A stretch of 64,000 bases of DNA. It comes from Mytilus californianus. Taxonomy: Eukaryota. A model generated the notes under the pieces. It was not told the origin of the DNA and made no database searches. It saw only the letters and a list, made by a program, of their open reading frames with translations. The translations under genes were made by a program, and so were the position numbers. How positions within the stretch are numbered: position 1 is the stretch's first letter; the number at the start of each line of letters is the position of its first letter. The DNA lies in the NCBI RefSeq assembly GCF_021869535.1, contig NW_026262723.1:88970001-89034000 (forward strand), given 5' to 3'. This document shows positions 25,353 to 60,919 of the stretch, in pieces.

Positions 25353-25423
25353 ATGATTCGTTCATACTTATGGATATCTTTATTTACTGTGTGTTCTTTT
25401 AATATTTATACATCCAAATCATG
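25353..25423 (+). CDS. Wnt8: Wnt8 exon 1 (signal peptide MIRSYLWISLFTVCSFNIYTSKSW)
   Basis: ATG at 25353; hydrophobic N-terminus; strong donor TG|GTAAGT, phase 2, matching exon 2 to give W-SLNEIL. Not in the ORF track. Confidence 0.75.
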
Positions 25424-27157
25424 GTAAGTTACTTTGTTCCATTTTTCATATTTCAAAATTAAATATTTGTCACCTATTATAACCATCTATGTGATTATTT
25501 ATTTTAAAGGTTTTTATTTATTAAACTTTTTTTATTGATATATTATTTGATTTGATCTTTCATTCTTTATATTCCTAAACTGGGAATAAATCAATGTTCT
25601 AAAACTATATTGATATTGATTTTTTTCTGTCTTTAAACATTTCGTTTTTGCTTGTTTAATATCTTATTTAAATTTCGTCTTCAACTTGGGCATATCGTAA
25701 GAGGGTTTTCGAGCCTTGTGCTTATATTACAGAGAACATCTGTAACTGACAAGAGTGACTGGTCTCTGATATGGCTTTTCTCCCTAAACTAGTCGAGTTA
25801 TTTTTCTAAACTAGTCTGTCTCTGATAAGACTTATTTTCATTTGACTCTGTCCATTAGACATTCATAGTTTTGTATCATAAACATTATATTAGTATTGTG
25901 AATCTTGGTTTTAATGTATAGTTAGCTGTAATTCAGATTACTTTGCGTTAATTGAGATCATTTGTTGTATTGTTGATTTCAGCATTATTGCTTTACGTTG
26001 TTTAATATTGTGGCTGATTGCTGCCTGCTAGAAATGCGTAGGCATGTTCGTTTCAAATTTGATTTTCGGCATGCCAAACACACTCCAAGAATAATTCGTC
26101 GATAATCTACACAATAGTTGAGGTTTTGCTGGCGATACTTATAATATACTTTTACATATAATGACAGCTCAACGTGTACATATTTGTTAATATAAAATCT
26201 ATATCGATTCGTACTTTTAATGGGTACTTTGTATCAGGCGTTAGCATTGAAAATCGTTTCGCGCATTTTGTCTTTACTTTTTTTAGCTTTTTGTTTTCGT
26301 ATTAAGGATTTCAACTTGGTGAGGATTAATCTGTTGTTCCATCTATGCAGTTTGTGTCATATAAACCTTATGATTTCTAAAAATATATTTTCCATGACTA
26401 CCCATCTGTGATGCCTTGGTATATAGTACTATTATTTTAGATTTCAAAAAAAAAAATCCGGACAGGATGTTAAGATATACGTCCTGTTTCAGTCTTATGA
26501 ACCCTTTTAAAATTTTTTTCTACCATATAATTTCTTGCGACTTGTTGAAAACATATACGGTTGCTGTTATAGTCAAAATAAACGTATTAAGACAGTTACG
26601 TAAACTCGAAGAGATGTTTCATAGTATTATGTAAAGTTGAAGTGGAGCGGCTTTGTCGCAATTTTAAGATTCAACTGGTTTATATTTTATAATCGTAAAA
26701 ACAAAATATTTTTTTTTAATCTTAAGTTTTAGAATAATTAAAGATAAAAATTGCCTAGAGAAAACTTGCTATTGTGGCTAGAATGTAAATTCTATTCGTC
26801 AATTTATATATCAATTTAATATGCAATGAGATGTTCCTTTTAATGCAATAGCGCATGATTATACATAATTATTTATTTTCATTTCAATGCTCGTGATATT
26901 TATTTTGAAGCAACTTTTATATCAATTATTTACCAATTATTTATTATGTATTTTTCAAAATTCTCTTCACCTTCAACCAGATTACAAAAAGACCAGCACA
27001 TTAATATTGTAATTATGTATCCATACAAATTGTTTTAAAGTCGAGTTTAATTCATTAATACAAGAACATTTATTATGTAAATTTTGACAATAAAGTTTAT
27101 TGACAGATTATAATATGACTACAATGTTCTCATTCGTTTTAGATGCTGTTGTTTTTA

Positions 27158-27229
<72 letters not shown>
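27158..27229. repeat. (ATT)n microsatellite, ~24 units, in Wnt8 intron 1
   Basis: Direct reading; explains the poly-N ORF 27108-27368. Confidence 0.95.
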
Positions 27230-27230
<1 letters not shown>

Positions 27231-28235
27231 AGCACTCATAAAATACCTCCTCGCAGACATGTTCAACAATAACAACATATTATTGGACAACTTCTTGCTA
27301 CGTAACGAAACCTGATTTCTAAATAACCTAATAGCACTTACCGTCTCTAATAAAATTTTAATTGTCATCGCTCATGATTCTCCATTTTGAAAGCAAATTG
27401 CATGGCAAAACTTTTAACAAACAAAGCATGTACATATTTAACTTGCCCTTTAAATTGACTTTTTTACTCTGCTTTTACGTGATTTTTTTTTAATAATTTG
27501 TACTTCATGAATTTATTCATTTTGATGGTAACAATATTTTCATGGTGATTTGAAAATTATTTCCTTTTTTTTTAGCGGCCTTAAACTAGACTAGTCATTC
27601 ATAAGCTCAGTTCAAGATTGCTCAAATCCTGTTAGTTTTAGATGACGTTAATTCTATGTCACATTGTCTTATTTTGTCATTGTCCATAACATTGTACTTT
27701 AAATTTCATCTTTTTTATGTCATCTTTTTTATGATGGTGTCCAAACAAATCTTGTTATGTTAAGTATCTCTTCATGGCTGTATTCCAGACAACTGTCCTT
27801 GTCTGCACTTGTTTTGTCATAAAGCCAAATAACTGGTTGGCAGTATATAATTAAGTGCCAGTCTTTGTAAGAATCAGGTAATTTTGAAAAAAATCAAAAC
27901 CTGGCCGAACAAAACCAACCGACCTAACCGTCCTATTTTGAAGTTGCCCTCATCCTGAGTTAGAAATGGTAGGTCTTTCGTTTTTGTGTGTCTGTTAATT
28001 CGAGAAATCTCTAGATAACTTTTAGTTAGAATGATAACAAATTACGGAGTTAGTTCCCCATAATTGTTAATTTCTCGTGCGTTTCAACCAAATTATATCT
28101 TAAATTACCAGAACAGGAAAAGGAAACGAATGTTATATTCGTGCACCATTATACATTTTGAACATAAATAAATGTCAACTTGAGTGGGTTTTAGTTTGTC
28201 ATGTTTTCACCACTGCCTGATTCTAGGGAAGATTG

Positions 28236-28450
28236 GCACTTAATGTCGACTAAAAAAAGAGAGACGATAGCAAAAGAATAATAAAAACCATAGGTCGAAG
28301 AAAATTTGACAACACCGTGACAAAAGCTCACAAAAACACAACACATAAATTAAAAATTGAGCAACACGAACCCCACAAAAAGCGGGGATGCACTCATGTT
28401 CTCTGGAAGGGCAAACAGTTCCTGGTTCACTAATTGCACCCACCGTGTTG
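28236..28450 (-). mobile_element. 3' tail of Penelope-like retroelement family D
   Basis: Reverse complement resembles 42781-43021 and 59800-60030. Confidence 0.6.
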
Positions 28451-28519
28451 AATAAGCTTTAGTTTTTAGAATTTTCTTTTGTTTGCAATGTACATGACTT
28501 TGTCTTTAACAATAATAGT

Positions 28520-28860
28520 TTTTGTTTTGGGTTGTCTTGGTCATGTTTTTCCTATATATTTTTTAAGTTGCGTGGTCATAATTTGACCCAGAGATTTTGT
28601 GGTCATTTGTTAGTCGATACATTTTTGAGTTGCCTTGGTCATGTATTATCCTTTGATTTTTTAATCTTAGTCATGTATTGTTCGATGTATTTTTGAGGTA
28701 CCTTAGTCATTATTGTTCTATGCATTTTTGAGTTGCCTTGGTCATGTATTGCGCTATGAATTTTTGAGTTGCCTTAGTCATGTATTGCCTAAATTTGTTT
28801 TAGTTGTCTTAGTCATCTATTGTTCTGTGGATTTTTGGAGTGCCTGTGTCATGTCTTGGT
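28520..28860. repeat. Degenerate tandem repeat, ~36-38-bp unit, ~9 copies
   Basis: Recurring ATTTTTGAGTTGCCTT(G/A)GTCATGTATT. Confidence 0.75.
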
Positions 28861-30236
28861 GTGCTGTATTGTTGGTTGCCATGTGTACTGTGGAGTTTTG
28901 GGTTGTGTTAATTACTGTATTTCGTTTTTTGGGCTGCCTTGAATTAGTATTGTCTGATTGCTTTTCGACATTTTGATTGCCCTTAAAACAAATTGAACTT
29001 GCGAAATAATTAAATACCAGTCCCAAGTCAGGAGGCAGTTGGTACAGATTTGTTTAACAAGACCATTTACAACGTCCCATACAACAGCCAAAAAATACTC
29101 CACAAATTAACAAAAAAACCAACGATCTTTAACAATTCACTAACGCCCACACTAGATGACAAACTCTATCACAGTAACTGCTATCATTTACATTGATTCA
29201 TAGAATCTTTACAAGTAGACAATGAATTCAACTCGACGAAAGAAAATTTGACGGCAATACCAAATAAAAGAAAAGAAAGAGAAACAGTTGTTGATAAAAT
29301 GCCATACTTCTGTCGGACAATCGAACAGTAACCTATTTTGTAGAGTACTCAACTCCCATGTTTCTTGACCATTACCATGCTATATATTCAACTGTCTGGT
29401 GAATTGTCTTATTCTTATGAATTGTGATTCAGTAAAATTTATAAGACTAAAAAAAACAGTACAGCATTACATTTATTTTATATGACATCGTACCTGCTGT
29501 TATTAATTGATGTTTTGTCTGATTTGAATTACAAGAGAAACAATTTATTATATAACGTTGATATGAACATAGTAACATAATGCCAAAATTTAAATAATAG
29601 GAAGCTTCGCGTGCCTAAAACATTTTAATTATTTAGAGAATTTGTTAGTTTTGTTAGTAACACCAATCTCAGATTTTATCGCGACAAAGTTGCAACATGT
29701 TTTTTTAAATTTTAGCTTTATTTGTTACAACTGCTGCATTTTTGTGGATTGTAAATCATTAATAGTAATATTCACGCAAATGGGTCCATGGATTGAGAGA
29801 ATGACATGACTTTACAAGCAAGGGCCATCTATGTGATCTAAACAAAGTTACATGACACGTTTGTTAAATAACTTTTATGTTAAACGAAGACAATAACAAA
29901 CAGATAACATCACATACATGCGTGCCAACAAATCTACATATAGAATTAAATATAATAACCTATTTCAAATGTGCACGATATTACATCGTCCATTTTGTCA
30001 CATAGTTGCCCTTGAATAAGATAACATTTCATCCCTGATCAAATATTTTGGTTTGTGAACAATTGGACTTGTCTTTATGACAATATGCATATAACATCGT
30101 GTAACGTACCGGGTTGAACTAAAAAATTATCCACAATTGGGACAATAGAATTAAAACGTCTTTATTTAATCTCGTAAAGTTAAGAGATATAGACTTCCTA
30201 TATCCCATTGATCTTTGTCAATTTATTTCGCTGCAG

Positions 30237-30327
30237 GTCATTAAATGAGATTCTAATAACAGGTCCAAAGGTCGGACTAGCGGCAACCAACTATACCAGG
30301 AATCCTGATTTGTTCACCCGTCACCCG
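30237..30327 (+). CDS. Wnt8: Wnt8 exon 2 (SLNEILITGPK plus 19-aa extension; alternative internal donor at 30270/30271)
   Basis: Acceptor CTGCAG|G. W-SLNEILITGPK matches the Wnt8-diagnostic WSVNNFL(M/I)TGPK N-terminus. Strong donor CCG|GTAAGC at 30327; weaker AAG|GTCGGA at 30270; both phase 0. Confidence 0.85.
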
Positions 30328-31267
30328 GTAAGCATTGTTCTCCGTAAACGGCTAATCTGCTTTTTCTATATAGATCTCGTAAAATCCATTGTGACTATTT
30401 ATATCGGGACAAATAGAATTATTAGGGTTTGGACTGTTCCGCTTAAGAAAATGCACATCATGAAAACAAACCATTGTATTTATAAAACTGTTTTTTATCG
30501 TATTAATACGTTTATTAGACACAGTACCAGAAGATCGATGTGTACGTATTGCCAAGAGGCCACTGCTTTGGTACTGATATATTTTAAGAAATGATATATT
30601 TCGTCACATATTTTTAAGTTAATAAAATATGTAATATTACCAAAAACTTAAGATTTTCCAACTTATGGCCTCGGAAACGTAACTATCGAGGGTTATTCCA
30701 GAAACACGTGACATGCGTACTGAAGACACTAATTATGAGGAGTAGTAGCCATGTATGAACCATGATCGAGAATGTGGAAATAGGGGTTGATATCCTGAAA
30801 AAAATGCTTAAAAATGGTCGATAATTTTTGAAAATTATGAAAATATCTGAATTTGTGAAATATATGCTCCCTTGAAAGTTACAACTCGCTGATAATAATA
30901 ACACAATATAATCATATTGACAGAGAAAAGTATGACAGCAATAGTTCTTGTTTACCTTTCCTCTAGTTATTTTTCCCCATCATATTTTTTAATTGATTAT
31001 TACCTACGTTTGTTTTGCACATTCTATAATCTGAATGAGTTAGCTGGAAGTCAAATGGTATACTAGTAAGGTGGTCCAAATGGGAATATAAAGGAAGTTA
31101 ATTATGTACTAATATATACCAGAATTTGTATTAATTTTAACCACAAAAGAAACGTCTTCCCTGTAATTAAATCCGTCTCGTGCTGCGAATTTTGTCAAAC
31201 TGCTTTATTCTCTTTTCTGAACAAGGAATTTGTACGAAACATGTCTAAACATAGTAAGACTTTGTAG

Positions 31268-31394
31268 GTAGAGGCAAAAATTTTGGAAAGTGTCAGAAAG
31301 GGAACATTAAAAGCTCAAGAAGAATGTCAACATCAGTTTAAATGGGAAAGATGGAATTGTCCTGCAGATACGGCACCCTTTGATCAAGATTTTG
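31268..31394 (+). CDS. Wnt8: Wnt8 exon 3 (VEAKILES...EECQHQFKWERWNCP...DF)
   Basis: TTTGTAG| acceptor and G|GTGAGT donor; 127 nt, phase 0 to 1; conserved Wnt EC..QF.W.RWNC motif. Confidence 0.92.
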
Positions 31395-31886
31395 GTGAGT
31401 TTGTAATCACGCTGTGGATTTTTATATGCATTGAGAAGAGGAAGGTGACAATAGTATTATATACTAGAAAATGATATATGATTTGTTTGCTCATTTTCTT
31501 TTTTGAAATCACTTGAATGTCTTCAACAATATTCTTTGTAAGTTGCACTTTACAACAAAATTAAGTTAGTTCTTATATAGATATATGCCGATAACTGCTA
31601 TACATTTTTTTAAACCAAACTTACTAATGAACTTAAACGCTTAAGCGGGATGTAACAATTATAATATATATAAAATATCGACGAAGTAGGCATACAAATA
31701 CTTAACTTTGATGCTTGTTCATAATATTGTGAAAATTGACTGAAAAGCATGAATTGATATCCACATGTAAAAGAGAAGTGGTACTTCCATTTTAGTCGCA
31801 AGTCATCCAGAGGTATCGATTGTATTTACATACATATTTCAAATGCTTGTACTTTTCCCTATATGTAAAACAAATTATAATCATAT

Positions 31887-32077
31887 TTATCCTTTGTTGT
31901 CACTAACTTTTATTTTGTACACTCCATCAGGATGTGAACAAAACTGCCAGATACATTGCAAATTTTTGATATGTTGACAAAACACGCACAATACATCTGC
32001 CATACCGGAAGTTGCTGTCAGTCCGAACTCGGCTTGGTTTTTGCTCTTATATTGCCCCGTACATGGGTCTCTTGTTT
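31887..32077 (-). CDS. Nested antisense gene, exon 3 of 3 (cysteine cluster, ends ...DNKG-stop)
   Basis: Minus-strand acceptor TTTTTTGTTAATTGCAG|AA at 32078/32077, phase 1 as required by exon 2; open to the stop at 31887. Confidence 0.7.
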
Positions 32078-32572
32078 CTGCAATTAACAAAAAAGGGTTT
32101 ATCAAACTTAACGAGTCGTATTGTGTAATGAAGGTTTAATTAAAGACTATTTCATACTGACAACATCCATTGTTTGTCAGTTGATATAAACAAGAGGGAG
32201 AATATCCTCAAAGATTATGATTGTTCTAGAATTGGTTATAAAAACGACAACTACATCGATTAGAAAAAAAGAAAAGAAACTTAAATATCGTGACTGAGAT
32301 ATATTCAATTCCTGTATAAGCAAAGCATTAAACAGTACATGAACAGTGAATTGAACAATGCTGATACTTTCTAAATTAGCACAATTTGCGAACATTTTAA
32401 ACCGAAAACGTATAAATCCTCAAAGAAGCTGATAGAACTGAAAAAAAAGTGATTCCAGCAAGTCATATTAAGTAGTGGATTCTAATAAGTAAACACCGAT
32501 TTCGAATATTTCTGTAAATATGGATAACCTTGTCAATAGTGATATTTGATATAAGAATAACATTGAATATAC

Positions 32573-32968
32573 CTCCTCCATCATCAAAGGATAACATAGG
32601 GTTAACACTAGGATCGCATTCCACTTTCTGGTGACTATTTCGCCGCAATAGATATCCTTCTTTGGGTACCAGAAATTGTAGTTTTGAGCGGGATTGATGG
32701 CCTGTTAGATATCCAGTAACTCTATCGTAATACATAATAGGGATAGCTTGTATGTCATGCTCTACATGATTGTGCTGAAATACTGGAATGGCTCCAGATC
32801 TAGGATCCCATAAAAATTGGCGCCCATACTGGTCTCTAAACAAGCGTTGCTTGTTATTTATTCGTTCTCTGCTATCCTCTATACCCTGAATGATTGCCTC
32901 CGGATTCTGTTGAAAGGCTTTTGCTAAGCCATTCCAATACACATCGTTGCTCTTGCTGTGCGTGGCTC
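32573..32968 (-). CDS. Nested antisense gene, exon 2 of 3
   Basis: Acceptor TTTTTTAACAG|GA at 32969/32968; 131 uninterrupted non-repetitive codons; donor G|GTATAT at 32573/32572 (phase 1, moderately weak). Confidence 0.72.
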
Positions 32969-33084
32969 CTGTTAAAAAATGTTAAGTTTAATTGTTCATT
33001 CAAATTTGAGAGAGAATACATGGTACTAAAATTCATTTCCCATAAATTATTGTGACGAAAAGGTTAGAAAAACCCCTGACTCAC

Positions 33085-33238
33085 CGCTCGGTACATTTCT
33101 GTTATAAATTCCATATACAGGAAGATCGAATGTTGATGCTGTCCAATGTTGTGCAAAGGAAATGGCAACAATATAGGAATATAATATAATATAACAAAAA
33201 CATCCGATTTTTAGTCCAAAACACATTTTAAAATTCAT
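33085..33238 (-). CDS. Nested antisense gene, exon 1 of 3 (signal-peptide-like MNFKMCFGLKIGCFCYIILYSYIVAISFA)
   Basis: ATG at 33238; hydrophobic leader ending in ISFA; strong donor G|GTGAGT at 33085/33084, phase 1, joins exon 2 in frame across a 116-nt intron. Confidence 0.72.
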
Positions 33239-33641
33239 TTAGAATAAATGTGGTAAATATTGAGGGAAATACCGGGTAGAACATGTCTATAGAAATGTGT
33301 CACCTGACATCTTGTTGACAAGACATATGACAAATTACTAATTCCTTAGGGGTATTTCGGTCCAAAAGTTTATGGTTAGGATGTAACTTGTAATGCAATA
33401 ATATTAACCCACTTCAATATTCGTACATACGTTTTATTTAACAGTTTGAAACTTAATTGAGCAGTGTAATTTTCAGCGAGTAAAAAAATCTGAGAATGTT
33501 TAAACATACATCTGCTAAGATTTCAATGAATTCGGTCTGACATTTTAAAATATAGATTATATCACAAATTATATGAGAATGTTATCCATGCTATGTTCAT
33601 CCATCAGTGTTGTTGTAATGGAAAAAACTTTTCTGTTTCAG

Positions 33642-33767
33642 CTACCAGAGAAGCTGCTTTTGTTCAATCTATCAACGCTGCTGGAATAATGCACGTGGTC
33701 ACACAACAGTGTAGCTCTGGACAGGAAACATTTTGCACGTGTGATAATTCCAGAAATGGACAACCTG
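33642..33767 (+). CDS. Wnt8: Wnt8 exon 4 (ATREAAFVQSINAAG...CSSG...CTCD)
   Basis: TTTCAG| acceptor and G|GTAAGT donor; 126 nt, phase 1 to 1; canonical TRE.AF motif. Confidence 0.93.
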
Positions 33768-34351
33768 GTAAGTTCTGATTACAGCATTGATCAATATATT
33801 TATACATCACATTTATGTCATCTCTCAATGTTGTTGGAAGTGTAATTCGTCTGATGCGATCGGTGTATATAATGTTTAATGAATAAGGGTCAACAGTTGC
33901 AAATTAAAGATGTGAGTTTACATCGATGTGTTGTTTACTATGTTCAAAACTCGTAAATCCATTCAAAATTCACCAAAATATATATAAATTTAACTTTTGC
34001 GTAGGAGATATCTCATTAGAACATACGTTTGATACATTGTCAACCAGTTCATACAGTGTTGAAAATGTATTAAAGTTTGCCCTTCGTATTTCCCATACTC
34101 AAAATTTCAAATCAATTGAATGAAAATCAACATTTTTTCGTTCATCTTTTAGTATTTTTTCAATAGATCAGAAGAGTTTAGCTGATTTCCACAGCAAAAT
34201 CCATGTTATCTTTGTTCATGATTTAGACGATTGTTTGTATTACATCCTCCATCTTGAACTAGTAGGACTTGAACGATAGCCTTTACATATCCATATCTAT
34301 AAACAACCCATGTGCCTTAAAAGAGTATTAACATATGTTTATTTTCGACAG

Positions 34352-34494
34352 GTGGCTATAATTGGAAGTGGGGAGGATGTAGTGATAACATCAAGTTTGG
34401 AGACGAATTAACATACAAGTTTCTAAAAGGGTTGACATCTGGAAAGAATGAAAATGCTGCAATGCAGCTACAAAACTATGGTGCAGGACGCCAG
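34352..34494 (+). CDS. Wnt8: Wnt8 exon 5 (WKWGGCSDNIKFG...AAMQLQNYGAGRQ)
   Basis: CGACAG| acceptor and CAG|GTATGT donor; 143 nt; WGGCSD motif. Not in the ORF track. Confidence 0.93.
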
Positions 34495-35101
34495 GTATGT
34501 AAAAAATAGATCTTAGTGTTTTGGGTTTATTGTTCATTTTCATTTTTTTTTCTATCAAATTATTGGTTTGAATTATTTATGCAGTCTTTACTTCAAAACT
34601 TTATATTTTAACCATTGTTATCTGCTCCAAGTTTTCTAACATATGTCTTGCTAATTTTTTGTTTGTATATGCTATGATCAAAGTCTTTTGTTTTACTATG
34701 CATATTAGTTTGTTGTTTTATATGTAACTTTTTTTATTACGTGTGGTTATGGATATAGAGAACACTGCTTGAGTCGACGCCTATGGCAGTCTTGACTTTG
34801 GTTAAGGTTTTAGCTATTTATTTCTTCATTAATACTTCTTTAAATTAACAAAATGAAGAAAATCAATAAAAGCGTTTTTCTTCTGTTCATTTGATACATA
34901 AGTCTTTTTCCAAGTATTTTGTAAGATTTCTTTGGCTACGTATATCTTTCTTTGTACTATTTAGGGTAAAGCATATTCATGCTGTACAAAACAGGGAGTC
35001 GGAATTATTCAATACATATATTTAGTTTGCGTGCTTCCAGTATCACAAGTTAATATAAACGTTGATTTTTGTTTTGTAACAATTTATTTTGTTTTTTGCA
35101 G

Positions 35102-35599
35102 GCTGTTGCAAGGAATACTAAAATGGTGTGTAAGTGTCATGGTTTATCTGGAGATTGTTCTATCAGAACATGCTGGCAACAAGTCGCCACCTTCCGTGAA
35201 ATTGGACAGTTTTTAAAACAACGTTACAAGAAGGCAAAATTTGTCAATTATTTTGACGGCCAACTCCGACAAGGGAATGATGCAAGAACTCGCGAATTAG
35301 CCATATTTTCCAAAAAACAATTAGCATTTTTACAGAAATCTCCAAACTACTGCAGAGAAGACCATGTGTTGAACATAAAAGGAACAAAAGGTAGACAATG
35401 TATTCGAAGTAAAAATAAAAATGCTATGACAACTTCAGAACGAAAGAGTTGTCGAACTTTATGCAAATCTTGCGGATATAAAGTAAAGAAAGTGACAGTG
35501 GACGTAAGCAACACATGCAACTGTAAATTTCGATGGTGTTGTAAGGTGAAATGTGACAAATGTGTGTCAAGGGAAAATAATTATTACTGTGTAAGATAG
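35102..35599 (+). CDS. Wnt8: Wnt8 exon 6 (CKCHGLSGDC acylation motif to C-terminal cysteine-rich domain); full protein 351 aa (332 aa with short exon 2), 22 mature Cys
   Basis: TTTTTTGCAG| acceptor; CKCHGLSGDCSIRTCW, SPNYC, GTKGRQC and CNCKFRWCCKVKCDKC motifs; stop at 35597-35599. Confidence 0.95.
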   Translation, partial: AVARNTKMVCKCHGLSGDCSIRTCWQQVATFREIGQFLKQRYKKAKFVNYFDGQLRQGNDARTRELAIFSKKQLAFLQKSPNYCREDHVLNIKGTKGRQCIRSKNKNAMTTSERKSCRTLCKSCGYKVKKVTVDVSNTCNCKFRWCCKVKCDKCVSRENNYYCVR

Positions 35600-42575: not shown

Positions 42576-42631
42576 ATGAATGGAATAAATAGTTCTTGGA
42601 TTATTTTATCTATTTTCTTATTGGCGAGAAG
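42576..42631 (+). CDS. Duplicate candidate first exon (MNGINSSWIILSIFLLAR-R); possible alternative exon 1 of the diverged Wnt8 paralog
   Basis: ATG at 42576; hydrophobic core; donor AG|GTAGGA in phase 2, compatible with the acceptor at 52424/52425; homologous to 47522-47577. Confidence 0.4.
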
Positions 42632-47521: not shown

Positions 47522-47577
47522 ATGAATGGAATAAATAGTTCTTTGATTATTTTATGTATTTTCTTATTAGCCAGAGG
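47522..47577 (+). CDS. Diverged Wnt8 paralog, candidate exon 1 (signal peptide MNGINSSLIILCIFLLAR-G)
   Basis: ATG at 47522; hydrophobic core LIILCIFLL; donor GG|GTAGGC in phase 2 joins 52425 to give ARG-SLNEIL. Nearest compatible leader exon found. Confidence 0.55.
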
Positions 47578-51559: not shown

Positions 51560-52424
51560 TTAAAGTTATATGATAATTTGTAAATGTGTGTATTATCTAT
51601 GTTTGGCACCGCTACTGCTTGCACATCTTTTTGTTTTAAAGCGTCCTTTCTTGGTAGGACTGTTTTTCATCAGTGTTAAATAACCATTCATTGGATAGTG
51701 ACACCTTGTGGGCGCTACTCCTTACAATGACTTCATATTTGGTAAGCAGCTTGACGGTATTAAGTTGAAACGCTTGAGAACTTTTATGATCTTGAACATA
51801 CATACTTCCTGTTATCCGATACTTTGATATTTTTAATATGTTGGGGGAAACCATATTTTGTAGACGTCCAGAAACCACATGTTTGGAAGTTTTTTGCAAT
51901 ATGGTCACTATACCTTGGAATCTAGTACTATGCAAATGTTTTCACAACAGTCCCTTAATAAAATAAAAAAAAAAACACATTTCCATGAAAATTGCAAAGA
52001 TAAGTGGTTTAATTACATAAGTTGGGACGGTAATTTATCAAATGTGCGTAGCAATTTTTCCGCAGTCTATTTTGACTCCATTACAATGTAACATAAAAAG
52101 CAGTGGGGACATTTCGCTACGGTCTTTATCTAATTTCATCAAGAAAGGTTTAACATGTCGGATTGCAAAAATGTAACTCCAATTCTTTAACTTGGGTTCT
52201 AAATAGTCAATGATCTCTGTTCATGTCGACGATTTTAATGCTTTTTCAGTTGTAGTCGATGTACTAACATATTTTACTTTTATAAATGCAAATCTATAAT
52301 AATTCTGTGACAAAAATTATTTTACAATACAATAAACTTTGATTGATTTCTATATGCTTAACGCCCATTTGGAACTAGCATTGATCGTTGTTATAAGTAT
52401 ATATTTTTTTTCTTTTAGCTGCAG

Positions 52425-52524
52425 GTCCCTGAATGAAATTTTAAATAGATCTACAGAAGAAGGACTGGTTTTCAATACCTTTACAGAGAATGTGGATTTC
52501 ATTGATTTTCTCGACCAACATTCG
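52425..52524 (+). CDS. Diverged Wnt8 paralog, exon 2 (SLNEILNRSTEEGLVF...QHS)
   Basis: Same CTGCAG|G acceptor and SLNEIL start as Wnt8 exon 2; donor TCG|GTATGC; 100 nt, phase 2 to 0. Confidence 0.8.
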
Positions 52525-53001
52525 GTATGCATTAACTTCCCTTTATCTGTAAACGAACATCATTTTGCATCTTTTCCGGCATAACTGAACTTTTGTACAT
52601 AAAACATGTTAAATTGTGAAAGTCGGTTGAAAAGAAGATAATTTTGTTGATCAATTATCTTAAAGAAGGGTTTACATGTTCTTGTTCGGTAGTCATCCAT
52701 AGTTATTGATTATGCTGTTCATATAAAGTTCCACATATTAACGTAAAAATGACAGACCATGTGTATGTGTGTGTATGTGTGCATTTTAGTTTCTCGTCAG
52801 TGATGCTCGATTGCAGATATGGTAAATCTGAAAGGACCAACCTGTGAGGTAGAGTAAACACAAGGAAAAGTAAATTAATGTTCATGAATTGCAGAATGCT
52901 AAAGGTAAAGTTGTAAACTTTGTTGTTCGTTTTTTGAAGATTTTATGAAAATACGTATTTTTTTTGTAGTGAGTTTTATAATATTTTTTCCATTTTAACA
53001 G

Positions 53002-53128
53002 GTAAATGAAGAAATCTTACATATTATGACCAATGGAACTTCTATAGCACAAGAGGAGTGCCAATATCAGTTCAAATGGGACACCTGGAATTGTCCAGTA
53101 GATATAGCAATGCTTGACAGAAATGATT
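53002..53128 (+). CDS. Diverged Wnt8 paralog, exon 3 (VNEEIL...AQEECQYQFKWDTWNCP)
   Basis: TTTTAACAG| acceptor and T|GTGAGT donor; 127 nt, the same length as Wnt8 exon 3. Not in the ORF track. Confidence 0.88.
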
Positions 53129-54507
53129 GTGAGTTTTAAAAAAAATGTAAAAAGGGCTTGTGCGTTACGAATCTTACACCATAAAGAGTACTATAAAATA
53201 GATATAGGCTAAAATGAAAAAGGCTAGCCCAATATTTTTGTTAACAGTTTAATGTCACTTTGATTTTGGGCTGCTGTCTCATTGAAAAATACACTTCATT
53301 TTAAACATTTGTTTTATTTGGTTATCTACCTTCCATTGATATATATCAATAGGATCACGTCTTCGAAGAACGCGTGCCATAATAAAAAAAACGGAGCAAA
53401 TTGACATATGAGTCAAATCTGGGTGATGTAATGTTGTTGTTGATGGTTAAAAAATTAGCTGGTCAGTGGTCTTTACTTATTTTTATTTTAATTTATTCAA
53501 CAGCAGATAATAAAACCAAACAAACAAAAAGTTAGAAAATGAGAAGATACCGAGGAAAATGATAACCCCATAATCAAAAGAAAACCAAACTAAAATAAGG
53601 ACAACAGTCTAAGAATTACAGTAAACATCTGAAAATTCGGAAATTTTGTGGGCGAAACACGACTCTGGATTCTTTGAAAGTGTGAATAAAAATGAATGTT
53701 AACCGACTTAAACATATAATGCAAACTGTTAGGACACCTGTCAATTGTTTATGTGCAAATTTCGTTTCTTTTGTTTGGTAACTGTCTCATTGATGTACAA
53801 AATTTATCAGTTTTGAGATGAATTTGCTCACAAAATATTGAAAAATATAATGATTGCTAGGCAAACATTTGTAATGCAAAGTGTAAAGGAATAATGACTA
53901 AGATGAAAACAACATATTATGGAGAAGTGAAATACTGAACGACAATTATCTTTTATACAAAGATAATGGAAGTCGTACATAAAAAGGCAAATTTCTGTAA
54001 AAACTGACCATCTTTTACCCTAGTTTGGCCTGTAATGGACAGCTGTTTCGAAAAGTGCGTTCACAATTAATGATGGGAGTGCGTCATACTCCAGGTATAG
54101 AAAATATTTCAACCATATTCAAATAAATGTCCATGTTTGGCATTGCTTGGGAGTTTTTTTTTTCTGATGTTAACAAATTTTGAATACAAAGAATGATATT
54201 GTCCTTCGTCTATCTATCTACCACTGTCCAGTTTCTTGTCAAGTTAACTCTGTGTATATAAAAGTATCTGTTTATTCCTTTAATAAAAGTTTTATTCTGA
54301 CGGTTCAGGTAACATCTGGAACATTCAAGGGAATGGTGATATCTTTATACCACATGCTTGTAATCATTCAAATAATTGTTACTCCCGAACAAATGTGTCA
54401 TGATCTTGGCCTTATCAATATTTTGAATGATTGATTAACGGATCGATCATTTGTGTTGTTGGCCAGGTTTTGTTAATCTTTGCCTTAAAATACTTTTTTT
54501 ATTACAG

Positions 54508-54630
54508 CCACAAGAGAGGCATCTTTTGTTCAAGCAATAACCGCAGCTGGACTTATGTATGCCGTAACGAAGTATTGTAGGTCAGAGGAACAGACCTTAT
54601 GTTCATGTGATCATACAAAACGGGAACCAA
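54508..54630 (+). CDS. Diverged Wnt8 paralog, exon 4 (TREASFVQAITAAG...YCRSEEQTLCSCD)
   Basis: ATTACAG| acceptor and A|GTAAGT donor; 123 nt, phase 1 to 1. Not in the ORF track. Confidence 0.88.
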
Positions 54631-55437
54631 GTAAGTTTGTTCTTGTGATATTACATGCTTTTTCTTCTACAGTTGTTTTTGAAGTATCATAGTTCGCATT
54701 ATATGCGATGCGAAGCTATCATAAGTTTATCATTGAATTAATAAGCTATTTATTTAAGGCAATATGAAATAGACAACAATAAGAGATACACGCAACAAAA
54801 ACACACGATAAGAAAGGTACGTATTATTTTAAAATAGACTTGAATGTTATGAAAAAAATAGAGATGTAAAGGACCTACATCACAAAGGTAAAAATCCAAA
54901 TTTAAAATGACTAATTTTCAACAAATTCAATAATTATTTACATGAAAACGATACATGTAAGTCCTTTTACAATGACCGAGACTGGTTCTTACAATCCGGT
55001 TAAGATATAACGAGCATGCTTTTACAATTATTAAAAAGCATTATCAACTCTTCAATTCTTTCTATTAATGCTTTTAACAATTGTTTGGATATACTTTTGG
55101 TCCGTTTCGGTTTTATCACCTCTTCAAAGTTTGTATGATGTTTTGGTTCTTCAAATATTTTGACATTTAGCAGCACTGAAGAGACATTAATTGTCGAAAT
55201 GCACTTTGTGTGCAGTTACATTGGTACCTTTTATGTTATATTATGTATAGTTGTATAAACCGGTTTACAAATAATCTTTTATAAAAAATTATTTTGAAGT
55301 TTTGTCAAATCTTAATTTAAACATAGTTCACAAATTGTTTTATTATAAGTTTGATTTCACACACAAAGCAACCAAACTGTATTTCATGTTCTCACAATAA
55401 AGCTTCTATTTTGAAAAAAAAACATATATGTATACAG

Positions 55438-55583
55438 GTCAAAATTCAGGAATGGTTTGGGGAGGCTGTAGTGATAATATAAAATTTGGGATAAAGTTTA
55501 CACAGCAGTTACTCAACAAGATGGACCCTGGAAACGATTCAAATGCAGCAATGCGACGTCATAATTATAAAGTCGGACTAAGA
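55438..55583 (+). CDS. Diverged Wnt8 paralog, exon 5 (VWGGCSDNIKFG...AAMRRHNYKVGLR)
   Basis: TATACAG| acceptor and AGA|GTAAGT donor; 146 nt, phase 1 to 0. Confidence 0.88.
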
Positions 55584-55958
55584 GTAAGTGAGACAATATA
55601 CATATTTAGTCAATGCCACAATTGAAAGCGGTTATATTTATTTTCGTGTAATATATTTAAATGTATCAAAGTTAAACGCTGAAAAGCAATTAAATCCCAA
55701 AAATTAAACAAACAAGCAAAATCATGTATACCTCGTTCAAAAAAAGTTAAAAACGCAAAAGTCAACAAAAAAATTCTGTGTATGAGTTTTTTAATCTTGT
55801 TGAGAAGTGATTAAACATTAACACAATGAACCTCGAACAAGATAAAGATACAGTGGTACTAGCTCATTATTTAACAAAAATTAAGTATTAGTATACCTTG
55901 TGGCAACATTTTTTCCCTCATCTCACTATAACTTTAATTTTACCATCATGTTTAACAG

Positions 55959-56252
55959 GCAGTCTTGTGGAGTGCAAAATTGGATTGTGTATGCCCTGGT
56001 ATTAATAATAACTGTGCAACCATGAGAGTATGCTGGAAACAAGTTTCCATCTTCCGTGATATTGGAACTTTCTTAAAAGAACTATATACACATGCACAAT
56101 TTGTTAAATATCTGGATAAACAGCTTTGGTTAGAATACTATGGTGGAACTCGTGAATTGATTTTAAAGAAAGAACTAGCATACTTGCAGATGTCACCAGA
56201 TAGTATCTACGTACCACCAATCTTCAAAAACAAAGGTAAGAATGGCGGATAA
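55959..56252 (+). CDS. Diverged Wnt8 paralog, exon 6, truncated and lacking the acylation Ser (281-aa product, or a pseudogene)
   Basis: TTTAACAG| acceptor; CVCPGINNNCATMRVCW replaces CKCHGLSGDCSIRTCW; FRDIGTFLK and LAYLQMSPD align to Wnt8; stop at 56250-56252. Confidence 0.82.
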   Translation, partial: AVLWSAKLDCVCPGINNNCATMRVCWKQVSIFRDIGTFLKELYTHAQFVKYLDKQLWLEYYGGTRELILKKELAYLQMSPDSIYVPPIFKNKGKNGG

Positions 56253-56899
56253 TATATTATTAGTAACTCCCAAAATCCTCTTGAAATCACGTGTCTCTTT
56301 TTTTAATCTCCTTTCCATGATTGTAAACAGTTTAAATTAATTCAGACCGAAAAGGTATAGGACGCTTTACTATTGAGGAAACAAAATATACCACTTTTTG
56401 TAAGAGTAAAGTCATTGGCTCCCTTTTAACTTTGCCACATCTCCCCTACAATACCCGCAAGCAGCCATCTCAAAATTTTCAATATATCATATAATAACCG
56501 GTCGAAATCTGGAATCCAATAAATTGTTTGTGTTTCCTATCAAGGTAGAGTTAACTGGTAATTCTGATAATGTTTAAAAATAAAAGTAAAACTACTATAC
56601 CGATTTCAGTGTGCACAACACATATTTCTGGTATGACCGTCAACTCTTAAAACAAACAAAAATGGGAACCCAAATATATTAATAGTTTCTATGAGCATTA
56701 AATCCAAATTGGGGGAATTCAAGAAAGTAGAAATTTTATTTTTGATATATTTATAAAATCTATAAGCTGTAAATGGGGAGATGTGGCAGGAACCATTATC
56801 TTGCCCATGAAATTGGAAAAAGTAAAAATCGTCCATACTTTAAATCATGTTGATTCATGAAGAGATAAAAAGAGGAATCCGGAACAATCGTAGATCTGT

Positions 56900-57420
56900 T
56901 TAATGTTCCTTTTGGAATATCAACCAACTTGAAAATAAAACTAGATCTTCATTGACTTTGCTGGATATCCAAATTACTCTATAGTTCTAACAAAAAAGTT
57001 ATAATGCTAAGCCAGATATAATATTTGTATGAGAAAGGAAAAATCTTTGTAAACCCCTCTGATTCAAAAACATTTTTTTTAAACTGACATCATCAAGATG
57101 CTTGATGTACTTATTGACACCATGTTTGTTATGTTTGAAGGGCGTGTTTTTCAACAAGCAATATGAATCCTATGTTACCCAAGTATTGCAAACTTGTTCT
57201 TTTATTCTAATGAAGCAAACTTGAGCTTCTGTAGAAAAATAAAAAGTAGCCAGCATTAACCATAACGCCATTTTCCGCTATACAGATGATGTTCTTTCAC
57301 TTAATAAATCAAATAACTTTGTAACTATATCAATTGCATTACAACGATTGATATCTTAATTTTCATCTAGAAATTTACAATGAGAGTCGGTTGATAACCA
57401 CTATTTTCTTGATAGAGGGC
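56900..57420 (+). mobile_element. Highly decayed Penelope-like RT fragment
   Basis: Frameshifted IIKMLDVLIDTMFVMFEGRVFQQ and FRYTDDVLSLN remnants. Confidence 0.6.
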
Positions 57421-59508
57421 TATTAAAAATAATGAATTAAACCACCTCGGATTTTTTGTCACGGCCATAGCTAGTTTAAGTTTTATTGATATGTCATTAA
57501 CGTACAACCTAGCAATTCCATAAAAAGAGAGCGTCTTATAACGAGTGGACAACAAAGACAACGTATAAAACGTCCACAATAGAAAACGTCTGTTTTTATA
57601 TAATTGGCCGTCTTCCTAATCATGGCATATATAGAACAGATTTGAGTTTACATTGCCATTTTGGTTTGTACTGGTTGTCTATCTAGTTTATTATTCTTCA
57701 ATTACAGTAATGTTAAAGACATATCAGAATCTTGTAAAGATGTTGAGGATTGTTAAGTTGACTGATCAGCACTGGTAAGTTCACCGTGTGTGTTATATTC
57801 ATATATAAATATAGTTCTGATACAAGGATGATAAATTCACATACGTTTGTCAAAAGAAGATACCAATGGAACTCATTCTAATAAGTCGAAGACAAACAGA
57901 CACCGTCATGGAAAAATTTACAAAAGTCTACAAAACACAAGAAAACTAAAAAATGAGCGACACGAACCCCACTAGAATCTCATCTTGTTGAATTTTTTCA
58001 TAGTTTTCATTTTCACTTATACTGACGACAAACATGTATAAAACCCTTGAAATGCATATTTATTTGATTAAGGGTTGCTGCGTTTAATAAACGTATTGAA
58101 TTAAGGATTCTAAATTGTTACGTTGAAGTCATCCCTTTGAAATTTTCACCGACTTTAACAAAATAGCCATAGGCAAGTTCCAATTGTGGTAGCACTAGTC
58201 TCTTTTTCCCGATTGTTACATAAACGAGTTTTAACTTGCAGGGAACAACACGAAAGGGACACTTTTTGACCAGGGACTGCTTACTCTTGATCATCTTAGT
58301 TTTCCCTAGTTTTGTTTTAAAGAGGTTCTGTTTCTTTTGCTTTAGTTTTGAATGTTGTATGTTATGCGATTTTATTTTTTAATGTCTGTGCTGTCCCTTC
58401 TGGTATAGGTTTAGTATTGTCTGGAAAATCATATGTTCAACCTTTCATATTAGGTCAGGTTGTTGGGTTGGATAATTTACATGACCAATGGCTAATGAAT
58501 TTGGTGATATCTTGGTTTCAGACAAGAATCATTCACAGTTCAGTTACAAGATTTCTGTTAGCTCTCTCACCAGATATGAAAAATCAATGTATTTTACAGG
58601 TGTAACATGGATGACGTATGTAACAAGAGGATCAGGAGTACCAAAGTTTACCTCTATTTTCGGTGAAGTGGAGTTTTTCAATTTAGGCTTTCCGTTAATT
58701 TTTTTCAAGGGTGTTGTTTATCTTTTCGATGTTTTTACTCTGGTCATGGTGTAGTCAGTTTTTCGTCAATTTTGGATTTTTGGTTGCCACTTGGTACCTT
58801 TTCCATTTTATTTTCTGATTTTAAAAGTAAAAAATACCACCGTAAAAAAGTCTTCTGTATAAAAATCAGGAGATGAGGTATGACTGCCAATGAGACAACA
58901 ATCCACCAAAGTGTATTCGTTTTTGGATTTCGATAAATGATGCTTCATCAAGGCTTAGTTCATTTCCCTTTTTCCTATCATACCACAACATTTAACTATT
59001 AATTGGTATAACACAAAGTTGTATGAGAAACACCTGCATCAAAATGTATCAGTCAGTGTTAAATTCAGACTTAGTTTGTATTAATGAAATGCTCAGTATC
59101 ATGAGAGACAAAATGTTTCCCGTTCTTACACCAGATTTATCTTAATACTGGGAAAAATACTTACAAATGACTACAACGCAAAAATACGGGCCACAGATGA
59201 GAAAAACAAATTCAAGCTTTTCCTGAATTACCCTGCATTATTCTATTTACATTTTATCGAAGAAAATATAACCGAACGCCTTGTATTCAATCATGTTTCC
59301 CTGGTATCTTTGGTGAGTTTTTGCATATGAATATGACATTGTGGTATATTTTTGATTTTCTATTTCATTGTTTCGATTTTTTACTTTCTATGGTATATGA
59401 TGTTTTAATTTGTATATGCAACACTCCGTTTAAAGTAAACAATGCATTATGAGAAAGTAGTTTCCTTACTTTGTCAATGTATTCCAACAATCAACTTTAT
59501 ATTTGCAG

Positions 59509-59590
59509 GATATTCGACCCGGCTTTGGTATTAGGCCCACTAATAGTATCTAATAATACCCGCAATGCATACTTTCTCACACGACTCCAG
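59509..59590 (+). other. Isolated exon resembling Wnt8 exon 2 (possible third paralog or relic)
   Basis: ATTTGCAG| acceptor and CAG|GTAAGT donor; phase 2 to 0 reading IFDPALVLGPLIVSNNTRNAYFLTRLQ, 10 of 27 identities to Wnt8 exon 2 with one 3-codon gap (manual alignment). Confidence 0.45.
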
Positions 59591-59673
59591 GTAAGTATGA
59601 ATCAAAGTAAAGCCATAAGATAAATTAATTTAGTTATGATAAAATTGGACTTTAGTAAGATGAAAGATGAAGT

Positions 59674-60030
59674 ATGAGTTGGTTGACCGTTATGGAATAA
59701 CCGTTTCACAGATGATATCGGATATATTCCTTATGTCGTTACTACAATCCCCTTCCCTTTCACGAATATGACCTACCGAATTAGACTATTTACAGGGTTT
59801 GTAATAATATGAACAACACATGTGGAGCAGGATCTGCTTACCCTTCCGGAGCACCTGAGATTACCCCCAGTTTTTGTAGGGGTTTGTGTTGCTTAGTCTT
59901 TAGTTTTCTATGTTGCGTCTTGTGTACTATAATTTGTCTGTTTGTCTTTTTTTTTGTTAGCGATGGCGTTGTCAGTTTATTTTCGATCTATGAATTTGAC
60001 TGTCCCTCTGGTATCTTTCGCCCCTCTTTT
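59674..60030 (+). mobile_element. Family D retroelement 3' fragment
   Basis: Reverse-complement match to 60920-61284. Confidence 0.8.
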
Positions 60031-60919
60031 AGTATTTGTAACATTGTTTCTACTGGCTGTAAAAAAAGAAACTGAATGAGCTCCAATAAAGTGGACCACT
60101 ACAACAGTTTAATGTGTTGTAAATAGGGACTATATACCATTTGTTAAAAACATAGGCCAACATGCACAGTTCGATCTGCTCTAAAGAGTAATTTTTTTAT
60201 TTTTTAGTTTGTAACTCCAAAACATTTCGTGAATACAACTTGATGATTCACATGTTGTAAGGATTATAAATTGATTTGGTTTCGATATTATGGTTTATAA
60301 TTAAACTAGGACCCGCACCATTCTTTTTGAGAAGCCATTTAAGGGAAACTTTACAGTTTAGTGGATAAATGTAAAGGTTTAGTAAATTAACAGCCTAATC
60401 GTTTCAAAAGTTAGTTAGTTGTTTATGACTCATGTTAAGTTTGCTATTTTGACGTATTGGGAAACATCTATATTTGGTTATTCTCTCAAACAGGGTTTTG
60501 GAAACTTTATTGTTAGCATCCTGGAAATGTTTTCTAGTTATTGGTATGTCATAAAACAATCCGATTTAATTTTGATGACTTTCATATTATAATCACTTTG
60601 AAATATTGAAATAAACATTAGGACAAAGAATTTATGCATTTCCATCTTAGTACAAAGATTCATACAAGAAGAACTCAGAAAAAGATTTGTTAAATGTCTG
60701 ATATTTTTAATGGAGTATTTTAATGTCTTTGTTGAATACAGTTTACAAGTTTTCGAACAGATGATTTGAATTCCAATGTATCTGATGTTTGGAATGCTCC
60801 TGTAAGACTTTTTTTATTTCTCATGTATGGCACAAACAGATCAAATGAATGGAGGTATTTACAAGATTTTGTCTTGTTTAATTTGAGCTTCCCCTTTATA
60901 AATAGCCCAATGTGTTACT

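What the first reader, a model, noticed from the sequence alone, without database searches (positions are those of the whole stretch)
56196..56270. Paralog ends at a CAA-to-TAA-equivalent stop and keeps exactly the 10 N-terminal cysteines
Gap-free manual alignment: Wnt8 SPNYCREDHVLNIKG-TKGRQC versus paralog SPDSIYVPPIFKNKG-KNGG*Y. The stop falls on the Wnt8 Gln codon and the next TGT is TAT, with faint similarity for about 5 more codons. All 12 C-terminal (linker/index-finger) cysteines are missing, including the SPxYC cysteine that lies before the stop, whose partner is in the lost domain in solved Wnt structures. The predicted product has an even 10 Cys. Inference: removal of the would-be unpaired Cys suggests selection on a stable N-terminal-domain-only protein rather than random decay. 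A strong donor AAG|GTAAGA at 56235/56236 could instead add another terminal exon.
Basis: partly seen in the sequence, partly recalled or inferred. Interest (0 to 1): 0.7.

Follow-up and report, generated by a model that had tools for sequence, protein, structure and literature searches.

The report
Mussel double-Wnt fusion gene, not truncation
The stop codon that seemed to cut this mussel Wnt8 copy short lies in an intron: the RNA splices out 15 bases earlier and runs on into a second Wnt8-like unit, giving a conserved 600-residue "double Wnt" protein in which both units lack the fatty-acid attachment site and the intact receptor-binding finger.

Summary
The sequence observation holds. The in-frame TAA at 56250-56252 aligns with a Wnt8 CAA, the next codon is TAT where Wnt8 has TGT, similarity fades by about 56276, and the SPxYC cysteine is replaced.

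The paralog does not end there. RNA reads and transcript contigs from two studies splice from the donor at 56235|56236 to 57708. They continue through exons 57708-57774 and 59509-59590 into a second Wnt8-like unit beyond the window.

The window is Mytilus californianus. RefSeq already models this gene as "Wnt-2-like" isoforms X1 and X2, each 600 aa and 12 exons. M. trossulus has a 598-aa ortholog and M. coruscus has matching partial models. In M. trossulus the donor is conserved, but 2-nt and 1-nt indels just after it put the TAA out of frame, as expected for an intron.

Both units are under purifying selection (dN/dS 0.32 and 0.25, against 0.056 for Wnt8). Unit 1 is a Wnt N-terminal domain only. 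Unit 2 lacks the finger tip and its six cysteines. Neither unit has the acylated serine.

The fusion is annotated but appears undescribed in the literature searched. Its function is unknown.

The parts
42576..42631 (+). Alternative first exon, used by RefSeq isoform X1 (MNGINSSWIILSIFLLAR..).
   Evidence: It lies in the 89%-identical 1.2-kb duplicate of the exon-1 region. P0054 begins with this sequence. The X3 contig matches from 52417, which fits an exon 1 ending ..AG as this copy does.
47522..47577 (+). Alternative first exon, used by RefSeq isoform X2 (MNGINSSLIILCIFLLARG..). It encodes a hydrophobic, signal-peptide-like N-terminus.
   Evidence: Exact exon map of P0076 on L002, which equals the window. 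Hydropathy.
52419..52524 (+). Exon 2.
   Evidence: joint 52523/4 to 53001/2.
53002..53128 (+). Exon 3 of unit 1, carrying the EECQYQF..WNCP motif.
   Evidence: Pfam wnt match. Joints seen in RNA contigs. Exon map.
54508..54630 (+). Exon 4 of unit 1.
55438..55583 (+). Exon 5 of unit 1, carrying the WGGC motif.
55959..56235 (+). Exon 6. This is the shortened descendant of the last Wnt8 exon. It holds the thumb hairpin CVCPGINNNC (no acylatable Ser) and ends ..SPDSIYVPPIFKNK at the donor G|GTAAGA.
   Evidence: The joint 56235 to 57708 appears in 9 raw RNA reads (7 start positions) and in contigs of two samples. The exon is 277 nt in M. trossulus as well.
56236..56276 (+). Start of intron 6, a relic of former Wnt8 coding sequence. 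It contains the TAA at 56250-56252 (Wnt8 CAA) and TAT at 56253-56255 (Wnt8 TGT).
   Evidence: Spliced out in RNA. In M. trossulus 2-nt and 1-nt indels follow the donor and the TAA is out of frame.
57708..57774 (+). Exon 7, a linker with no Cys (VMLKTYQNLVKMLRIVKLTDQHW) that is predicted helical.
   Evidence: It is conserved in M. trossulus and M. coruscus, with indels that are multiples of 3 only. Predicted as a low-confidence helix.
59509..59590 (+). Exon 8, the homolog of Wnt8 exon 2 (..GP..NNTRNAYFLTRLQ against ..GPKVGLAATNYTRNPDLFTRHP). It begins unit 2. The remaining exons lie beyond the window, at window-equivalent 64439-64571, 70225-70347, 70686-70840 and 71084-71491.
   Evidence: The loose end of contig X1 matches 59510. 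Exon map. Contig X3 continues for the 82+133 nt expected and then into exon 10.
25353..35599 (+). Parent gene Wnt8, complete, with exons 25353-25423, 30237-30327, 31268-31394, 33642-33767, 34352-34494 and 35102-35599.
   Evidence: It is 95.8% identical to M. trossulus Wnt-8a-like, with dN/dS 0.056.

Best explanation
The interval 56196-56270 spans the last 40 bases of exon 6 and the first 35 bases of intron 6 of a 12-exon Mytilus californianus gene. RefSeq models it as 'protein Wnt-2-like', XP_052068651.1 and XP_052068652.1, 600 aa.

Shown:
- Wnt8 was duplicated in tandem in the mussel lineage into two further copies.
- In the first copy a GT donor now sits inside the old last exon, at the codon aligned with the Gly of Wnt8 ..IKG|TKG... 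The former linker and Cys-rich-domain coding sequence behind it is now intron. The TAA is one of its decay marks.
- Splicing joins this shortened unit 1, in frame, through a 22-residue linker exon to the second exon of the next copy. That skips any signal-peptide exon of that copy.

The product is one secreted-type polypeptide:
- a hydrophobic N-terminus;
- unit 1, a Wnt N-terminal domain with 10 canonical Cys, Asn in place of the acylated Ser, and no C-terminal domain;
- a linker of about 50 residues without Cys;
- unit 2, a Wnt8-like unit with a thumb shortened by 2 residues (Ser gone) and a 26-residue deletion that removes the finger tip and 6 Cys.

Inferred: the protein is secreted without lipid and cannot grasp the Frizzled CRD in the canonical two-site way. 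It would then act as a modulator or decoy for other Wnt-binding partners, or have a new function.
For: - RNA. The joint 56235|GT..AG|57708 is seen in 9 raw stranded RNA reads (7 start positions) out of about 10 crossing, and in spliced contigs of two further samples from another study. All upstream introns are confirmed. Contig X3 (1761 nt) runs from exon 1 through exons 7, 8 and 9 (133 nt) into exon 10. Nine X16 reads cross the exon 9-10 junction.
- Identity. The window is identical over 27,425 nt to GCA_021869535.1, and the exon map reproduces P0076 exactly.
- Orthologs. M. trossulus XP_063447148.1 (598 aa) has the same 12 exons and the same 277-nt exon 6 with donor G|GTAAG. M. coruscus models cross the same junction. 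M. galloprovincialis has unit 2 with the same deletions.
- Constraint. dN/dS is 0.32 for unit 1, 0.25 for unit 2 and 0.49 for the linker, against 0.056 for Wnt8, at equal dS of 0.32-0.38. Linker-exon length differences are 3 and 6 nt. Intron indels right after the donor are 2 and 1 nt.
- Origin. The tree places unit 1 and unit 2 as sisters (96/91), next to mussel Wnt8 (100/99), inside the Wnt8 clade. The best solved-structure matches for both units are Wnt8.
- Fold. The AF2 model of unit 1 has pTM 0.73 with core pLDDT 89-97. It matches Wnt3, XWnt8 and the WntD N-terminal domain 4KRR. The tail is low confidence.
Against: - Read numbers are small. About 6% of X16 was read, and the upstream junctions have only 0-2 reads.
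- Coverage is higher on exons 6-7 than on exons 2-5, so an internal start or 3' bias cannot be told apart.
- Logan contigs can be chimeric, although the exon arithmetic fits exactly.
- Exons 9-12 lie outside the window and were read from the same assembly through L002.
- There is no protein-level evidence that the 600-aa chain is made, secreted, or left uncleaved.
- A minor intron-retaining isoform ending at the TAA (about 1 read in 10) is not excluded.
- The functional part is inference only.
Confidence: 0.88

Rival explanations
1. One reading: a stand-alone N-terminal-domain-only Wnt of about 281 aa is produced. This would happen by retention of intron 6 or polyadenylation within it, with translation ending at TAA 56250. 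It would be either the main product or a regulated short isoform.
For: - The TAA is in frame with exon 6.
- About 1 of 10 X16 reads at the site may be unspliced. The depth in bin 56180-56379 is slightly above what spliced reads alone would give.
- A Wnt N-terminal domain can be a stable fragment, as in 4KRR.
Against: - 9 of about 10 reads and all contigs are spliced at 56235. Depth is 0 in X16 from 56380 on.
- No protein of 155-492 aa with this end turned up in the homology search; that search found no standalone form of about 281 aa.
- Both RefSeq isoforms are 600 aa.
- In M. trossulus the read-through frame ends elsewhere (GKQWIMYYK*) because of 2-nt and 1-nt indels.
Confidence: 0.05
2. Two separate genes with a conjoined read-through transcript. 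Unit 1 and unit 2 would normally be expressed as separate proteins, and the fused ORF would be a by-product that annotation pipelines pick up.
For: - Tandem paralogs often give conjoined transcripts.
- Coverage on exons 6-7 exceeds that on exons 2-5 in X16.
- Other predicted proteins with two wnt domains exist and may be merged models.
Against: - Unit 1 has no terminal exon of its own in the RNA data.
- No signal-peptide exon for unit 2 was found. Exon 8 is reached only from exon 7 in the data and in three species' models.
- The junction exons keep the frame across species, with 3-nt and 6-nt indels only, and dN/dS 0.49.
Confidence: 0.06
3. A decaying duplicate. The locus would be a transcribed pseudogene whose open frame is a leftover.
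For: - Loss of the acylated Ser in both units, loss of the C-terminal domain in unit 1 and loss of the finger tip in unit 2.
- Protein evolution is about six times faster than in Wnt8.
Against: - An 1800-nt frame is open across 12 exons in two species separated by dS of about 0.36.
- dN/dS is significantly below 1 for both units (p 1e-7 and 4e-10).
- All 26 canonical Cys are conserved, and the deletions remove Cys in even numbers.
Confidence: 0.02

Closest known systems
Wnt8 (the parent gene at 25353-35599; XWnt8 4F0A, human WNT8A 7KC4)
   Same: Both units match Pfam wnt and sit inside the Wnt8 clade next to mussel Wnt8. Exon phases and boundaries are the same. The 10 N-terminal-domain Cys are kept in both units.
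   Different: Two units sit in one chain. Neither thumb has the acylated Ser (XWnt8 Ser187). Unit 1 has no linker or C-terminal domain. Unit 2 lacks 26 residues of the finger, including 6 Cys. Evolution is faster, with dN/dS 0.25-0.32 against 0.056.
Drosophila WntD (non-acylated Wnt; PMC2427328) and its crystallised N-terminal domain-linker fragment, PDB 4KRR
   Same: It lacks the conserved acylation Ser. WntD is the known case of lipid-independent Wnt secretion (title and abstract of PMC2427328). The N-terminal domain can exist as a stable fragment, and the unit 1 model matches 4KRR with target TM 0.76.
   Different: It is not an ortholog: the mussel gene arose from Wnt8 within mussels. WntD is a single full-length Wnt with a C-terminal domain. 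Here there are two units and the C-terminal domain is lost or trimmed.
Engineered C-terminally truncated dominant-negative Xwnt8 (Hoppler, Brown and Moon 1996; recalled from memory, not checked here)
   Same: It is a Wnt8 lacking its C-terminal Cys-rich part, as unit 1 is.
   Different: The engineered protein keeps the acylated Ser and is a single unit. Any dominant-negative action of the mussel protein is untested.
Other database proteins predicted with two wnt domains (Darwinula stevensoni CAG0883851.1, Glandiceps talaboti XP_077998206.1, Trichinella spiralis KRY34475.1)
   Same: They have two or more Pfam wnt stretches in one predicted chain.
   Different: In Darwinula and Glandiceps the best-matched domain spans nearly the whole Pfam model (positions 4-299 and 5-300 of 305), so a C-terminal domain is present. 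I saw no RNA or cross-species support for any of the three, and they may be merged tandem genes. Here the junction is seen in RNA and kept in frame in three Mytilus species.

Membership tests
Wnt family (Pfam PF00110) | Significant match to the wnt profile | tested here: met
   Exons of unit 1 score E 4e-10 to 6e-6 individually. The whole protein scores E 1e-112 with two stretches.
Wnt family (Pfam PF00110) | Conserved Ser in the thumb hairpin that carries palmitoleate (XWnt8 Ser187) | tested here: not met
   Unit 1 has CVCPGINNNC with Asn at the Ser position. Unit 2 has CTCQG--KGC, where the 2-residue gap removes it. The same holds in M. trossulus, M. coruscus and M. galloprovincialis.
Wnt family (Pfam PF00110) | Full set of 22 conserved Cys (10 in the N-terminal domain, 12 in the linker and C-terminal domain) | tested here: not met
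   Unit 1 has 10 of 22, plus one extra N-terminal Cys. Unit 2 has 16 of 22.
Wnt family (Pfam PF00110) | C-terminal Cys-rich 'index finger' that contacts Frizzled CRD site 2 | tested here: not met
   Absent from unit 1. In unit 2 the 26 residues holding CNCKFRWCCKVKCDKC are deleted.
Wnt family (Pfam PF00110) | N-terminal signal peptide (secreted protein) | tested here: inconclusive
   There is a hydrophobic stretch at residues 8-17, with hydropathy up to 3.2. No signal-peptide predictor was on hand.
Wnt8 subfamily | Groups with Wnt8 orthologs in a phylogeny | tested here: met
   The Wnt8 clade has support 95/95. The units plus mussel Wnt8 have 100/99. The best solved-structure matches are Wnt8.
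WntD-type non-acylated Wnt | Orthology to Drosophila WntD, and secretion independent of Porcupine and Wntless | tested here: not met
   Orthology is not met, because the gene arose from Wnt8 within mussels. Secretion independence cannot be tested with these tools.
   The TAA is spliced out with intron 6 in 9 of about 10 reads and in all contigs. It is out of frame in M. trossulus.

The most novel reading that the evidence does not exclude
Mytilus mussels make a secreted, lipid-free protein with two Wnt-derived units. It was built by exonisation that fused two tandem Wnt8 duplicates. It has lost both canonical Frizzled-CRD contacts (the thumb lipid and the finger tip) but keeps two Wnt palm domains. 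It may therefore act as a natural modulator or decoy for other Wnt partners (LRP5/6-type co-receptors, Ror/Ryk, secreted Wnt binders), or as a ligand of a new kind. The conserved extra Cys might allow disulfide-linked dimers. I know of no described natural protein with tandem Wnt domains, and two phrase searches of the paper library found none.
Probability: 0.3. Interest if true: 0.75.

Novelty: new variant of a known kind. Interest (0 to 1): 0.5.

Why it matters
Wnt ligands are almost uniformly single-domain and acylated, and they need both thumb and finger to bind Frizzled. WntD is the one well-known lipid-free exception. A conserved, expressed gene that strings two Wnt8-derived units together and has removed the lipid site and the finger in a disulfide-neutral way would be a natural experiment on what a Wnt palm domain can do by itself. 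It is also a clear case of gene fusion by a new splice donor inside a decayed exon.

For the scan, the case shows that an in-frame stop just after a strong donor should be read as intronic until RNA says otherwise.

Tried and rejected
- An alternative start at ATG 52354 (MLNAHLELALIVV..) was suggested by contig X3 matching from 52417. I rejected it because the true acceptor is 52419, and the two extra matched bases are the ..AG end of exon 1.
- A third Wnt copy or a Cys-rich-domain exon inside the window was not found by tblastx, tblastn or motif scans. Local alignment of the Wnt8 C-terminal-domain coding sequence to intron 6 is not significant (p 0.07 in M. californianus, 0.16 in M. trossulus).
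- Exon 7 as a relic of a signal-peptide exon: the split Trp codon and phase (TG|GTAAGT) match those of Wnt8 exon 1, but there is no significant sequence similarity. This remains speculation.
- Fetching the contig for P0054 failed because it is not on record. P0076 worked.
- The Janda 2012 paper is not held. Domain and lipid facts come from the review PMC8251975. The exact disulfide pairs are from memory.
- No furin-type site lies between the units.
- No Rfam family matches 47000-64000.
- Logan contigs for P0002 and P0056 gave no species names.
- A search of earlier scan notes for a Wnt fusion found nothing.

Full report
**What is in the window**

The window is AT-rich animal DNA. It is identical over 27,425 nt to Mytilus californianus assembly GCA_021869535.1, scaffold JAKFGE010000007.1. 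Motif scans, six-frame reading and tblastn show two Wnt-like genes on the + strand.

- A complete Wnt8 has exons 25353-25423, 30237-30327, 31268-31394, 33642-33767, 34352-34494 and 35102-35599. Its last exon matches solved Wnt8 structures best. It is 95.8% identical to M. trossulus Wnt-8a-like.
- A divergent paralog has exons at 52.4-56.2 kb. All its splice sites are intact, and each exon matches Pfam wnt.

**Check of the observation**

- Codon by codon, TAA 56250-56252 lies on the Wnt8 CAA, TAT on TGT, and ATT on ATT. The SPNYC Cys codon is ATC.
- In-register identity stays high (26/42) over 56235-56276 and then falls to the 30% background.
- No Cys-rich-domain relic is detectable further on.
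- So the sequence-level observation is right.

**RNA evidence**

One run search and one read-laying run were allowed. On 52380-58379:

- Stranded raw RNA reads (X16) and spliced contigs from another study (X1 and X3, which are different samples) confirm every intron of the paralog.
- They show a further joint from 56235 to 57708 (GT..AG). It has 9 reads at 7 start positions in X16, where about 10 reads cross the site, plus one contig each in X1 and X3.
- No contig covers 56236 onward, and X16 depth is 0 from 56380.
- The TAA therefore sits 15 nt inside an intron.
- The next exon (57708-57774) ends at CACTG|GTAAGT. The contigs' loose end matches 59510, giving an exon 59509-59590.
- The frame stays open throughout..IFKNK-VMLKTYQNLVKMLRIVKLTDQHW-IFDPALVLGPLIVSNNTRNAYFLTRLQ. 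The last segment is recognisably the homolog of Wnt8 exon 2 (..GPKVGLAATNYTRNPDLFTRHP).

**The whole gene**

An exhaustive profile search with exon 6 found one strong hit: a 598-aa M. trossulus protein with two Wnt stretches (XP_063447148.1). A word search with it found M. californianus 'protein Wnt-2-like' isoforms X1 and X2, both 600 aa, and M. coruscus models.

- The M. californianus proteins match my spliced translation exactly. Mapping P0076 on the assembly gives 12 exons, eight of them in the window and four beyond it.
- The two isoforms differ only in which copy of a duplicated first exon they use, 42576 or 47522.
- The real acceptor of exon 2 is 52419, not 52425. This adds a Cys that is conserved in three species.
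- Contig X3 (1761 nt) fits this model to the base. After exon 7 come 82+133 nt and then the start of exon 10.
- Nine X16 reads cross the exon 9-10 junction. They carry the four letters that distinguish exon 10 from exon 4.

**Orthologs and selection**

- M. trossulus has the same 12-exon plan, the same 277-nt exon 6 and the donor G|GTAAG.
- Immediately after the donor its sequence aligns with the window but has a 2-nt deletion and a 1-nt insertion. Read-through there would give GKQWIMYYK*, and the conserved GGATAAT is out of frame. This is how an intron behaves.
- By contrast the linker exons differ by 3 and 6 nt only.
- Between the two species dS is the same for Wnt8 (0.32) and for the fusion gene (0.35-0.38).
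- dN/dS is 0.056 for Wnt8, 0.32 for unit 1 (p 1e-7), 0.25 for unit 2 (p 4e-10) and 0.49 for the short linker, which is not significant.
- All canonical Cys are conserved.
- M. galloprovincialis has a partial model of unit 2 with the same features.

**Origin**

In a maximum-likelihood tree, units 1 and 2 are sisters (96/91). Together they are sister to mussel Wnt8 (100/99), with oyster Wnt8b outside, inside a Wnt8 clade (95/95). The RefSeq name 'Wnt-2-like' is therefore misleading. The gene is a mussel-lineage tandem triplication of Wnt8 in which the two younger copies became one gene.

**Anatomy of the product**

- Unit 1 (about residues 20-278) keeps the 10 N-terminal-domain Cys and a thumb of normal length, with Asn where XWnt8 has the acylated Ser. 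It has no linker or C-terminal domain.
- An AF2 model of unit 1 plus linker has pTM 0.73 and core pLDDT 89-97. It matches Wnt3, XWnt8 and the crystallised WntD N-terminal domain. The tail and linker are low confidence with one helix.
- Unit 2 (329-600) has a thumb shortened by two residues, which removes the Ser. A 26-residue deletion excises the finger tip with six Cys and leaves six Cys in the C-terminal domain.
- As I recall the XWnt8 disulfide map, the six lost Cys form three pairs among themselves and the six kept form three pairs. I could not test this here.
- A review confirms the basic facts: the thumb lipid on Ser187 binds CRD site 1, the finger binds site 2, and all 22 Cys are paired (PMC8251975).
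- There is no furin-type site between the units.

**Interpretation**

Shown: the stop is intronic, the fused ORF is transcribed, and it is conserved and constrained.

Inferred: a secreted, non-acylated protein that cannot engage Frizzled CRD in the canonical way. It may be a modulator or decoy, or it may have a new role.

Rivals, and why each ranks low:
- A short intron-retaining isoform: at most about 1 read in 10 fits it, and its frame is not conserved.
- Separate genes with a conjoined transcript: no terminal exon for unit 1 and no signal exon for unit 2 were seen.
- A pseudogene: excluded by the open frames and dN/dS.

**Novelty**

The gene model is already in RefSeq, so the structure is not a discovery of this scan. 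I found no paper on tandem Wnt domains or on this gene. The M. galloprovincialis 'Wnt8a' studied by in situ hybridisation is a different matter. Other proteins predicted with two wnt domains exist in databases but are unverified.

**Limits**

- Only about 6% of X16 was read and counts are low.
- One laying call was allowed.
- Exons 9-12 lie outside the window.
- There are no protein data.

Noticed in passing
window 41524-42752 and 46511-47689: An 89%-identical 1.2-kb duplication carries the first exon and its upstream region. It gives two alternative first exons, 42576-42631 and 47522-47577, which RefSeq isoforms X1 and X2 use.
   Followed up: partly
window 48063-49280: A tandem repeat with a unit of about 160 nt and copies 80-89% alike lies in intron 1 of the fusion gene.
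   Followed up: no
window 55169-55204: A core of about 35 nt in intron 5 has 25-120x depth in all four runs, on both strands, with loose ends on both sides. It is a fragment of an abundant expressed repeat. It has no Rfam match.
   Followed up: partly
window 57780-57974: RNA reads here carry G>A at 57957 and 57959 and break off at 57974. They probably come from other copies of a transposon-like repeat that is also seen near 28.3, 46.7, 59.8 and 61.0 kb, not from this gene.
   Followed up: no
window 54521, 54522, 54539, 54542 (exon 4) against exon 10 of the same gene: Contig X3 shows the exon-4 letters at the four sites that distinguish exon 10 from exon 4. The reference and runs X16, X1 and X5 show the exon-10 letters. 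This is either gene conversion between the two units in that animal or a table artefact.
   Followed up: no
window 52419-52424 (codons for Cys20-Arg): An extra Cys directly after the hydrophobic N-terminus is conserved in M. californianus, M. trossulus and M. coruscus. If it stays in the mature protein the Cys count is odd (27), which would allow a disulfide-linked dimer.
   Followed up: partly
window 57770-57780 and 25419-25429: Exon 7 and Wnt8 exon 1 both end with a Trp codon split TG|GTAAGT in the same phase. This hints that exon 7 descends from the signal-peptide exon of the second copy, but the sequence similarity is not significant.
   Followed up: yes
window introns 56236-57707, 57775-59508 and 59591-64438 against L001: Introns after exon 6 are 3 to 6 times longer in M. 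californianus than in M. trossulus (1472 against 232, 1734 against 512, and 4848 against 1644 nt). Repeat insertions are the likely cause.
   Followed up: no
L001:25238-30054 (M. trossulus): A 7TM receptor gene lies on the opposite strand about 3 kb downstream of the fusion gene. The Wnt8 gene with its nested antisense gene lies upstream, as in the window.
   Followed up: no
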